Below are positions 35,296 through 36,316 of a DNA stretch of 39,797 nucleotides, piece after piece (within the stretch, counting starts at the first letter, position 1; each line of letters starts with the position of its first letter). The stretch is from positions 21,992,954 through 22,032,750 of the forward strand of contig NC_068998.1 of NCBI RefSeq assembly GCF_001194135.2, in the 5' to 3' direction. Made by a program: the position numbers and the translations under genes. The DNA comes from Octopus bimaculoides. Its lineage: Eukaryota. The notes beneath the pieces are model-generated. The model was not told the origin of the DNA. It was given only the letters and a program-made list of their open reading frames with translations, and searched no databases.

Positions 35296-35433
35296 NNNNN
35301 NNNNNNNNNNNNNNNNNNATATAGGTGTTAGGAAACACCAACATGACTACATATATGAGATAAACCGCTCTAATGCTGTAGTTAACACACGTCAATGAAA
35401 ACATATACAGGAGCCATCATCATCCGAAAACTA

Positions 35434-35511
35434 CCGATCGTGAATTATTAATACAGACGTATCAACTTCGGCAGTTTCCGTTGCTCATCAGTTAAGGCAG
35501 CTCGATTTTGG
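35434..35511 (-). ncRNA. Type I hammerhead ribozyme, copy 1 (decayed)
   Basis: ATCGAG-ctgcc-TTAA-CTGATGA-GCAAC-GGAA-ACTGCC-GAAG-TTGATACGTCTG-TA-TTAA-taatt-CACGAT; GAAA changed to GAAG and stems II/III disrupted. Confidence 0.7.
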
Positions 35512-35779
35512 TTCTTTCCGGACACGCTTCGCCATTAATATTTGTGTTTTCATCATCCAAATAATTGGATGGTTAAGCGATTCACTAAAGTGTATATATA
35601 AATGAATATAAACAGCAGTTTGCAATGTTTCACCGAAAATGAGAATTATAATTGTCACTAAAAGTAACTAGGAAATACCTACATTGCTCGAAATAAGAGC
35701 TATGCCAGTCTAATGCTGTAGTTAATGCACATGAATGACAAGATATACGCTAACAGGGACTGTAATCACCGGAAAAGTG

Positions 35780-35858
35780 CCGATCGAGAATTCTTAATAA
35801 TGACGCGTCAGTTTCAGCAATTTCCATTGCCTCATCAGTTAACATACCTCGAACTCGG
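35780..35858 (-). ncRNA. Type I hammerhead ribozyme, copy 2 (best preserved)
   Basis: CCGA-gt-TCGAG-gtatg-TTAA-CTGATGA-GGCAAT-GGAA-ATTGCT-GAAA-CTGA-cgcg-TCAT-TA-TTAA-gaatt-CTCGA-TCGG: intact CUGAUGA and GAAA boxes, 6-bp stem II with GNRA loop, extended stem I with an internal loop, one C-U mismatch in stem III; predicted cleavage between 35798 and 35797. Confidence 0.88.
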
Positions 35859-36180
35859 TTCTTTCTGGACTAGTTTCGCCATTAGTGTTTGTGTTTTCGT
35901 CATCCAAATAATTGGATGATTAAGCGATTCGCTTATGTGGATACATAAAATTAATATCAACAGCAGTTTGCACTGTTTCACTAAAAAGGAGAATTACAAA
36001 TGTCACTGAATGCAACTAGGGTGGTAGGAAGCACCTACATTGCTAGAAGTAAGAGCTAAACCGCTCTAATGCTGTAGTTAAAGCACATCAAGGAAAACAC
36101 ATACATTAACGGGAAACATAATCGTCCGAAAAGTGCCGATCGAGACCTTAAATACTACAGGTGAAGTGAATTTGGAATGA

Positions 36181-36256
36181 GTCGAAGTTGAGCTTTCTGA
36201 TGAGACAACGGAAATTGCCAAAACTGACACGTCAGTGTTAAGAATTCTTAATCGAC
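36181..36256 (+). ncRNA. Type I hammerhead ribozyme, inverted copy (decayed)
   Basis: GTCGA-ag-TTGAG-cttt-CTGATGA-GACAAC-GGAA-ATTGCC-AAAA-CTGA-cacg-TCAG-TG-TTAA-gaatt-CTTAA-TCGAC; G12 to A and H17=G predict inactivity; lies within an inverted partial unit ~36176-36280. Confidence 0.75.
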
Positions 36257-36278
36257 ACCCTTTCGGAAGATTATGTTC

Positions 36279-36316
<38 letters not shown>

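What the first reader, a model, noticed from the sequence alone, without database searches (positions are those of the whole stretch)
35321..36280. Tandem hammerhead-ribozyme repeat: candidate cephalopod non-LTR retrozyme (circRNA) family
Seen: non-coding ~345-355-bp units in tandem; the two complete units and the inverted partial copy each carry a type I hammerhead. The three-copy consensus is TTAA-CTGATGA-GGCAAT-GGAA-ATTGCC-GAAA-CTGA-CACG-TCAG-TA-TTAA, which forms a complete canonical fold with a GUA cleavage triplet. Established: metazoan non-LTR retrozymes and hammerhead satellites (e.g. schistosome Sm-alpha, newt satellite 2) are tandem repeats of a few hundred bp whose transcripts self-cleave to monomers that can circularise. 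Inference: this is such a family in an octopus-like genome, with predicted monomers of 346 nt (35797-35452) and 354 nt (36151-35798). I cannot confirm whether the family is already described.
Basis: partly seen in the sequence, partly recalled or inferred. Interest (0 to 1): 0.9.

Follow-up and report, generated by a model that had tools for sequence, protein, structure and literature searches.

The report
Decayed hammerhead-ribozyme repeat in octopus DNA
This is a worn-out, non-coding insertion of about 960 bases whose ~350-base repeat once carried a self-cutting hammerhead RNA. It belongs to a class of mobile element already known in many animals, and the copies here are too mutated to be expected to work.

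Summary
The repeat is real. It holds two full units (346 and ~354 bp, about 78% identical), a 129-bp partial unit and an inverted partial copy of about 120-145 bp. Together they fill window 35323-36281, between (TA)n tracts and assembly gaps.

A type I hammerhead is recognisable in three places, but none is canonical:
- Copy c1 has GAAG in place of GAAA and a broken helix II.
- Copy c2 has an intact core but a C:U mismatch at 15.2-16.2 (triplet UUA) and a G:U at 10.1-11.1.
- Copy c3 has AAAA in place of GAAA and a GUG triplet.

Rfam gives no hit at gathering score; the best is 23.9 bits against 48.5 needed. The motif is still not chance. Copy c2 passes a one-mismatch descriptor expected 0.0005 times per random window.

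An independent solo copy found by luck in an Octopus bimaculoides chromosome has all three helices intact. It shows three compensatory pair changes, varies in the CUGANGA box only at the free N7 position, and has a GUC triplet.

Best reading: an old, dead insertion of an octopus non-LTR-retrozyme-type (Sm-alpha-like) family. The partial tandem, head-to-head inverted truncated copy and (TA)n target match the insertion pattern of Penelope-like elements. It is a new member of a known kind, of modest interest.

The parts
35257..35322 (.). (AT)n microsatellite on the left edge of the insertion, interrupted by a 23-N assembly gap at 35296-35318
35323..35451 (-). Partial unit u0: the first ~129 nt after the cleavage site. 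It forms the 3' end of the direct array and ends at a unit-internal CCUA|UAU next to (AT)n.
   Evidence: nhmmer E=2e-33; D2 family
35452..35797 (-). Unit A, 346 nt from cleavage site to cleavage site
   Evidence: fold z=-1.4
35448..35495 (-). Hammerhead copy c1, degenerate: GAAG in place of GAAA (A15.1 to G), a 1-nt deletion and mismatches in helix II, and a U:U mismatch in helix III
   Evidence: fails the descriptor
35798..36151 (-). Unit B, ~354 nt. Its 5' end lies within a few nt of the predicted cleavage site and abuts the inverted copy.
   Evidence: fold z=-4.43, 0 of 100 shuffles
35794..35842 (-). Hammerhead copy c2, the best preserved: CUGAUGA, GAAA and U16.1-A17 are intact. Defects are C15.2:U16.2 (triplet UUA) and G10.1:U11.1. 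Outer helix I extends the motif to 35785-35851.
   Evidence: descriptor hit with 1 mismatch, expected 0.0005 per random window
35846..35898 (-). 3' arm of the long closing stem (extended helix I). It pairs with 36093-36147 in the monomer fold.
   Evidence: inverted repeats I17 and I23; MFE structures
36093..36147 (-). 5' arm of the long closing stem of unit B
36142..36281 (+). Inverted, 5'-truncated partial copy covering unit positions ~256-354 plus 1-~55, head-to-head with the direct array. The exact junction within 36142-36160 is ambiguous.
   Evidence: I1 81% over 70 nt; nhmmer E=3e-9
36194..36241 (+). Hammerhead copy c3, degenerate: AAAA in place of GAAA (G12 to A), GUG triplet (H17=G), inner helix I broken, and two helix II mismatches
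   Evidence: fails the descriptor
36282..36316 (.). (TA)n microsatellite on the right edge, followed by an 828-N gap at 36317-37144

Best explanation
The block 35323-36281 is one old, dead insertion of a non-autonomous, non-coding retroelement family from an octopus genome. The ~350-nt unit of this family ancestrally carried a canonical type I hammerhead ribozyme. It is therefore a relic of a metazoan non-LTR retrozyme, or Sm-alpha-like hammerhead repeat.

Shown:
- the unit structure;
- the hammerhead-shaped motif and its degeneracy;
- a diverged relative in O. bimaculoides that keeps all three helices through compensatory changes;
- a partial tandem plus a head-to-head inverted truncated copy, sitting inside a (TA)n tract.

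Inferred:
- In the active ancestors, multimeric transcripts self-cleaved after GUH into ~350-nt monomers. Their ends are held together by a long extension of helix I, which would favour circularisation.
- The RNA was copied into (TA)n targets by the reverse transcriptase and GIY-YIG endonuclease of a Penelope-like element. That enzyme nicks and extends both DNA strands and can start reverse transcription internally, which would explain both the inverted copy and the TA-rich junctions.
- After insertion the copies decayed neutrally, each by about 11-12%, and lost ribozyme competence.
For: - Tandem units and inverted copy.
- Motif unlikely by chance: 0.0005 expected per window for c2-grade matches.
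- The four-copy majority consensus is a canonical hammerhead.
- The copy at L002 15856-15902 (O. bimaculoides CM046605.1) has helices I, II and III fully paired. It reads CUGAAGA, so only the free N7 position differs, and has a GUC triplet with one core defect.
- On the proposed fold 79.7% of cells pair, against 15-46% when the partners are slid. Three pairs show double compensatory changes (helix I U-A to C-G and A-U to U-A; helix II A-U to U-A). Only 11-14 of 500 shuffles reach the observed values.
- The helix III stem is conserved while its loop varies: CGCG, CACG, UACG, CCGA.
- Unit B folds with z=-4.43, its 5' and 3' ~55 nt pairing in a long stem.
- Unit size, GC content of 37-39% and absence of ORFs match the published definition.
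- A partial tandem with an inverted 5'-truncated copy at the upstream end and a (TA)n target bias is the published Penelope-like insertion signature (PMC8557442). A Penelope-like enzyme cleaves and extends both strands and initiates internally (PMC11167929).
- Retrozymes are argued to derive from Penelope-like pLTRs (bioRxiv 10.64898/2026.07.22.740005).
- Penelope elements are abundant in coleoid genomes (PMC8967140).
Against: - No copy is canonical, and Rfam finds nothing at gathering score.
- The hammerhead region is no better conserved than the unit body.
- Only four hammerhead copies were available, three of them from one insertion, so all covariation rests on a single outside sequence.
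- In the nearest-neighbour model the hammerhead fold of the consensus (-14.8 kcal/mol) loses to an alternative pairing of the core CUGAUGA with UCAGUA (-17.4 kcal/mol).
- No Penelope-like ORF lies in the window, so the mobilising partner is inferred only.
- The block is a ~1-kb contig between two assembly gaps, so its flanks beyond the (TA)n are not secure.
- No RNA data are available.
Confidence: 0.75

Rival explanations
1. The locus is a live retrozyme. Its transcripts self-cleave at the two or three hammerheads and give 346- and 354-nt linear and circular RNAs.
For: Copy c2 keeps all 11 invariant core nucleotides together with helices I and II. Unit B folds unusually stably. Palindromic helix III sequences could allow dimeric hammerheads to form across neighbouring units (inference).
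Against: - Releasing a monomer needs two active sites, and c1 (A15.1 to G) and c3 (G12 to A, H17=G) carry changes classically known to abolish cleavage.
- Copy c2 has a C:U mismatch at 15.2-16.2, and its hammerhead fold is 8 kcal/mol above the MFE.
- The units are 22% diverged, which indicates an old insertion.
- Rfam scores are far below threshold.
Confidence: 0.07
2. The block is a piece of an autonomous Penelope-like element: an array of its pseudo-LTRs that has lost the ORF, or whose ORF is hidden in the 828-N gap. It would then not be a separate non-autonomous family.
For: Penelope-like pLTRs carry hammerheads and form partial tandems with inverted truncated copies in (TA)n. A gap of 828 N lies directly to the right. 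Retrozymes and pLTRs are phylogenetically intermingled.
Against: - Two full units follow each other with no ORF between them.
- No RT or GIY-YIG signal appears in ORFs across 31-38 kb.
- An 828-bp gap cannot hold an ORF of about 2.5 kb.
- The L002 relative is also ORF-less.
- The hammerhead here has a 5-bp helix III with a tetraloop, unlike the minimal Penelope-type hammerheads (PMC4209133).
Confidence: 0.12
3. The block is an ordinary satellite or SINE-like repeat in which a hammerhead-like string arose by chance and never acted as a ribozyme.
For: Rfam finds nothing at threshold. The hammerhead region is not preferentially conserved. Core-only strings of the form CTGANGA...GAAA occur five more times in the window by chance.
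Against: The full descriptor is expected 0.0005-0.0045 times per window. The diverged O. bimaculoides copy keeps all helices through three compensatory changes, and varies in the core only at N7 and H17 apart from a single G12-to-A defect.
Confidence: 0.05

Closest known systems
Metazoan non-LTR retrozymes (Cervera & de la Pena 2020, NAR; for example Mytilus galloprovincialis, Acropora millepora, and the Ambystoma mexicanum 330/350-bp repeats)
   Same: Type I hammerhead once per unit. Tandem units of 150-450 bp (346-354 here). Low GC (37-39%). No ORF or LTR. Occurs both as multimers and as solo copies. Found in genomes that also hold Penelope-like elements.
   Different: The copies here are degenerate. 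Helix III is long (5 bp plus a tetraloop) and helix II has 5-6 bp, against the usual 1-2 bp and 4 bp. The archetypal loop 1-loop 2 nucleotides cannot be recognised. No RNA or circle data. Cephalopods are not named in the papers I could read.
Schistosome Sm-alpha and newt satellite 2 hammerhead repeats
   Same: Repeats of about 330-350 bp, dispersed and in tandem, with a type I hammerhead that cuts multimeric transcripts to unit length. The palindromic helix III and loop suggest possible dimeric action, as in newt (own knowledge).
   Different: No sequence similarity was detected through Rfam. Helix III here is stable enough for a single-motif fold. No Pol III-type features were examined.
Hammerheads in pseudo-LTRs of Penelope-like elements (Cervera & de la Pena 2014; Craig et al. 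2021)
   Same: Insertion anatomy: partial tandem, inverted 5'-truncated copy at the upstream end, and a (TA)n target.
   Different: No RT/GIY-YIG ORF is present. The hammerhead is not the minimal Penelope type.
Rfam Hammerhead families (CL00010: RF00163 type I, RF02276 type II, RF00008 type III)
   Same: The CUGANGA / GAAA / UH core and three-helix junction appear in the consensus.
   Different: All window and L002 copies score 15-24 bits against thresholds of 37-48.5, and the best-scoring models have the wrong topology.

Membership tests
Hammerhead ribozyme, type I | Invariant core C3 U4 G5 A6 N7 G8 A9 ... G12 A13 A14 A15.1 ... U16.1 H17 | tested here: inconclusive
   Fully present only in c2. 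Copy c1 has A15.1 to G; c3 has G12 to A and H17=G; the L002 copy has G12 to A. The majority consensus has the complete core.
Hammerhead ribozyme, type I | Three helices around the core, with helix I open and helices II and III closed by loops, supported by covariation | tested here: met
   79.7% of cells pair, against 15-46% when slid. Three pairs show compensatory double changes, reached by 14 of 500 shuffles. The sample is only four sequences. The type III alignments offered by Rfam have unpaired helix III positions.
Hammerhead ribozyme, type I | Score at or above the Rfam gathering threshold | tested here: not met
   No hits at gathering score in the window or in L002-L005. The best hit is 23.9 bits against 48.5.
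Hammerhead ribozyme, type I | Site-specific self-cleavage 3' of H17 | not testable with these tools
   Needs in vitro transcription. From classical mutagenesis (own knowledge), c1 and c3 are expected to be inactive and c2 weak at best.
Metazoan non-LTR retrozyme | Short tandem repeats of 150-450 bp, from dimers upward, each unit holding one type I hammerhead | tested here: met
   The array holds about 2.4 direct units of 346-354 bp plus an inverted partial copy. There is one hammerhead-derived motif per unit.
Metazoan non-LTR retrozyme | Low GC content (below 45-50%) | tested here: met
   GC is 39% in unit B and 37% in unit A.
Metazoan non-LTR retrozyme | Non-autonomous: no ORF, LTR, PBS or PPT | tested here: met
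   The longest ORF is 64 aa, with no Pfam family and no homologue. No terminal direct repeats other than the units themselves. PBS and PPT were not searched for specifically.
Metazoan non-LTR retrozyme | Dispersed multicopy family in the genome | tested here: inconclusive
   One further copy was met by chance in 48 kb of sampled Octopus DNA, at L002 15842-16109. No census was possible.
Metazoan non-LTR retrozyme | Expressed as self-cleaved linear and circular RNAs of unit length | not testable with these tools
   No transcriptome access.
Penelope-like element (autonomous) | ORF encoding RT plus GIY-YIG endonuclease between pseudo-LTRs | tested here: not met
   No such domains in ORFs of the block or across 31-38 kb.

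The most novel reading that the evidence does not exclude
Octopus genomes hold an abundant and so far undescribed non-LTR retrozyme family. Its younger copies would keep an active hammerhead with an unusually long, palindromic helix III and release ~350-nt circular RNAs. This locus would be one of its fossils, and the family would be mobilised by the Penelope-like elements that expanded in coleoids.
Probability: 0.3. Interest if true: 0.45.

Novelty: new member of a known kind. Interest (0 to 1): 0.3.

Why it matters
If younger, intact copies exist, cephalopods would join the animal groups that make small ribozyme-processed circular RNAs. The family would also give a handle on Penelope-like element activity in coleoid genomes, which are very repeat-rich. 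The locus itself is a neutral fossil with no expected function. Its practical value is as a seed for a family search, and as a warning that Rfam thresholds miss such decayed or atypical hammerheads.

Tried and rejected
- **Rfam:** at gathering score there was nothing on the window or on the four fetched loci. E-value mode gave only weak hammerhead hits with type II or III topology. I rejected the type III reading because helix III does not pair in L002 or c2, and the small helix I hairpin exists in only 2 of 4 copies.
- **TRF:** it misses the array.
- **Pattern scans for more copies:** the hammerhead pattern found nothing in viral or metagenome contigs. Body patterns gave only chance hits: L001, a metagenome contig, and L006, a bacterial MAG. 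Nothing turned up in viral contigs.
- **Protein route to other copies:** a search with the concatenated spurious ORFs of the unit gave no hit. An exact look-up of window ORFs found nothing on record.
- **Organism identification:** a search with the retroelement-like ORF pieces next to the array gave no hit.
- **Other fetched loci:** L004 and L005 (ENA ERZ25067582) share only the mariner with the window and are not cephalopod-like.
- **Literature string search:** the hammerhead and unit sequences appear in no paper.
- **CpG-hotspot idea:** three of the four copies (c1 is unchanged) have changes at C11.1-G12, which is a CpG. The idea is only suggestive, because CpG observed/expected is about 1.0-1.2 in the units and 10 of 65 differences are of CpG type.
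- **tRNA search:** no tRNA-like genes in the window.

Full report
**What is in the sequence**

The block 35319-36316 is a ~1-kb contig between two assembly gaps, at 35296-35318 and 36317-37144. Apart from (AT)n/(TA)n at both ends, all of it is one repeat.

Direct repeats are spaced 340-356 bp apart. blastn gives 77% identity over 477 bp. A profile of the units places the following pieces:
- unit B at 36149-35799, minus strand;
- unit A at 35797-35452, minus strand;
- a 129-nt partial unit at 35450-35324, minus strand;
- an inverted piece at 36142-36286, plus strand, covering unit positions ~256-354 and 1-~55.

Units A and B are 78% identical overall, which explains why TRF did not report them. 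The units hold no ORF above 64 aa, no Pfam family and no protein homologue. GC content is 37-39%.

**The hammerhead**

Read on the sense strand, the three copies are:
- c1: TTAA CTGATGA G-CAAC GGAA ACTGCC GAAG TTGA TACG TCTG TA TTAA
- c2: TTAA CTGATGA GGCAAT GGAA ATTGCT GAAA CTGA CGCG TCAT TA TTAA
- c3: -TTT CTGATGA GACAAC GGAA ATTGCC AAAA CTGA CACG TCAG TG TTAA

None of the three is canonical:
- c1 has A15.1 changed to G and a damaged helix II.
- c2 keeps every invariant core base, but has C15.2:U16.2 (triplet UUA) and G10.1:U11.1.
- c3 has G12 changed to A, H17=G, and a broken inner helix I.

These are positions where classical mutagenesis shows large or total loss of cleavage (own knowledge: Ruffner, Stormo and Uhlenbeck 1990, and the NUH rule).

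Rfam gives no match at gathering score in the window. In E-value mode it gives only 15-24 bits against thresholds of 37-48.5, and assigns them to the type II and III models. A strict type I descriptor finds nothing. With one helix III mismatch allowed it finds only c2.

**Is it more than chance?**

Yes. In 2000 first-order Markov windows the c2-grade descriptor occurred 0.0005 times per window, and a relaxed one 0.0045 times. The majority consensus is a canonical hammerhead.

**An independent relative, and where the window comes from**

A mariner remnant at window 5575-5901 (Pfam HTH_48) led to named Octopus bimaculoides and O. sinensis proteins. These gave about 22-26 kb of genomic DNA around each (L002 and L003).

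The window shares several interspersed repeats with both loci at 69-83% identity. It shares none, beyond the mariner, with two non-cephalopod loci. An octopod origin is therefore supported, though the species is not fixed.

By luck, L002 (O. bimaculoides CM046605.1) holds a solo copy of this very repeat at 15842-16109. It is 72% identical over 141 nt by blastn and scores E=1e-56 by nhmmer. Its hammerhead reads CTA CTGAAGA GGCT ACAGCAAA AGCC AAAA CTGA CCGA TCAG TC TAG. All three helices pair, the triplet is GUC, the box differs only at the free N7, and the single core defect is again G12 to A.

On the four-copy alignment:
- The type I fold pairs 79.7% of cells, against 15-46% when the 3' partners are slid.
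- Three pairs show double compensatory changes: two in helix I and one in helix II.
- The helix III stem is constant while its loop varies.
- Only 11-14 of 500 shuffles reach the observed values.

All covariation rests on one outside sequence, so this is supportive rather than conclusive.

The hammerhead region is 62-75% identical between copies, and the unit body 63-82%. The ribozyme is therefore not under selection in these copies. That fits dead insertions decaying neutrally, and it argues against a working locus.

Three of the four copies (c1 is unchanged) have changes at the one CpG formed by C11.1 and G12: TG in c2, and CA in c3 and L002. This hints at a mutational hotspot. The hint is weak, because CpG is not depleted in the units.

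**Folding**

Unit B folds at -103.4 kcal/mol with z=-4.43; unit A has z=-1.4. In both units, and in the junction contexts, the ~55 nt after the cleavage site pair with the ~55 nt before the hammerhead. This extends helix I into a long imperfect stem (I17/I23, 28, 55, 56). Such a stem would hold the two ends of a cleaved monomer together (inference).

One caveat applies. In the nearest-neighbour model the consensus hammerhead fold (-14.8 kcal/mol) loses to an alternative in which the core CUGAUGA pairs with UCAGUA (-17.4 kcal/mol). In c2 the gap is 8 kcal/mol.

Helix III plus its loop in c2 (CUGACGCGUCA-) is almost a 12-nt palindrome, as in hammerheads that act as dimers (inference).

**How it got there**

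The direct array and the inverted 5'-truncated copy lie head to head. The outer ends of both abut (TA)n at TA-rich points inside the unit. The 5' end of the direct array lies within a few bases of the predicted cleavage site.

This is the published signature of insertions made by Penelope-like elements: a partial tandem, an inverted 5'-truncated copy at the upstream end, and a (TA)n target (PMC8557442). A purified Penelope-like enzyme cleaves and extends both DNA strands and starts reverse transcription internally (PMC11167929).

Retrozymes are thought to be mobilised by, and derived from, such elements (PMC7229834; bioRxiv 10.64898/2026.07.22.740005). Penelope elements are abundant in coleoids (PMC8967140). 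No Penelope-like ORF is present in the window, so this step is inferred.

**Comparison and novelty**

The locus meets the structural definition of a metazoan non-LTR retrozyme in unit size, tandem arrangement, low GC, lack of coding capacity and one type I hammerhead per unit. It is a fossil of one. It differs in having longer helices II and III and no recognisable loop-loop motif.

Retrozymes are documented in molluscs (mussel) and many other phyla. The giant squid genome paper lists 235 Rfam Hammerhead_1 loci. I found no paper naming an octopus or cephalopod retrozyme, but I could not check repeat libraries.

**Verdict**

This is a real feature and a new member of a known kind. It is inactive at this locus and of modest interest.

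Noticed in passing
window 5575-5901 (-), and by eye about 2875-3145 (-): Mariner/Mos1-type transposase remnant (Pfam HTH_48, E=1.3e-12) with a frameshift. It is 81-83% identical in DNA to copies in O. bimaculoides and O. sinensis. Protein relatives also turn up in ants and a lemur, as expected for mariner.
   Followed up: partly
window 12061-12330, 26668-26955, 8067-8166, 27611-27759: Interspersed repeats shared with the O. sinensis and O. bimaculoides loci at 69-82% identity, probably SINE-like families. ARAGORN finds no tRNA-like gene in the window.
   Followed up: partly
window 34463-34747 (-) and 34877-35068 (+): Two ORF pieces on opposite strands just left of the array. By eye they resemble the C-terminal tail of invertebrate retroelement proteins (...SVIIGALENV...). 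They have no Pfam family and no homologue, so they remain unidentified.
   Followed up: partly
window 35296-35318 and 36317-37144 (also six other N runs): The hammerhead block is a ~1-kb contig bounded by gaps on both sides, so its placement, orientation and true unit number depend on scaffolding. Most gaps in the window sit inside microsatellites.
   Followed up: no
L002 15742-15841 and 16117-16330: The O. bimaculoides solo copy starts directly at a (GT)n tract, 19 nt upstream of its hammerhead. At unit position ~208 it is followed by a short TA run and then a SINE-like element (GGCGCAGGAGTGGCTGTGTG...) that ends in (TA)n.
   Followed up: no
window 35802-35813 (-) and L002 15887-15898: Helix III plus its loop is a near-perfect 12-nt palindrome in c2 (CUGACGCGUCAU). 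In L002 it is one step from a different palindrome (CUGACCGAUCAG). This would allow two hammerheads to pair through an extended helix III.
   Followed up: no
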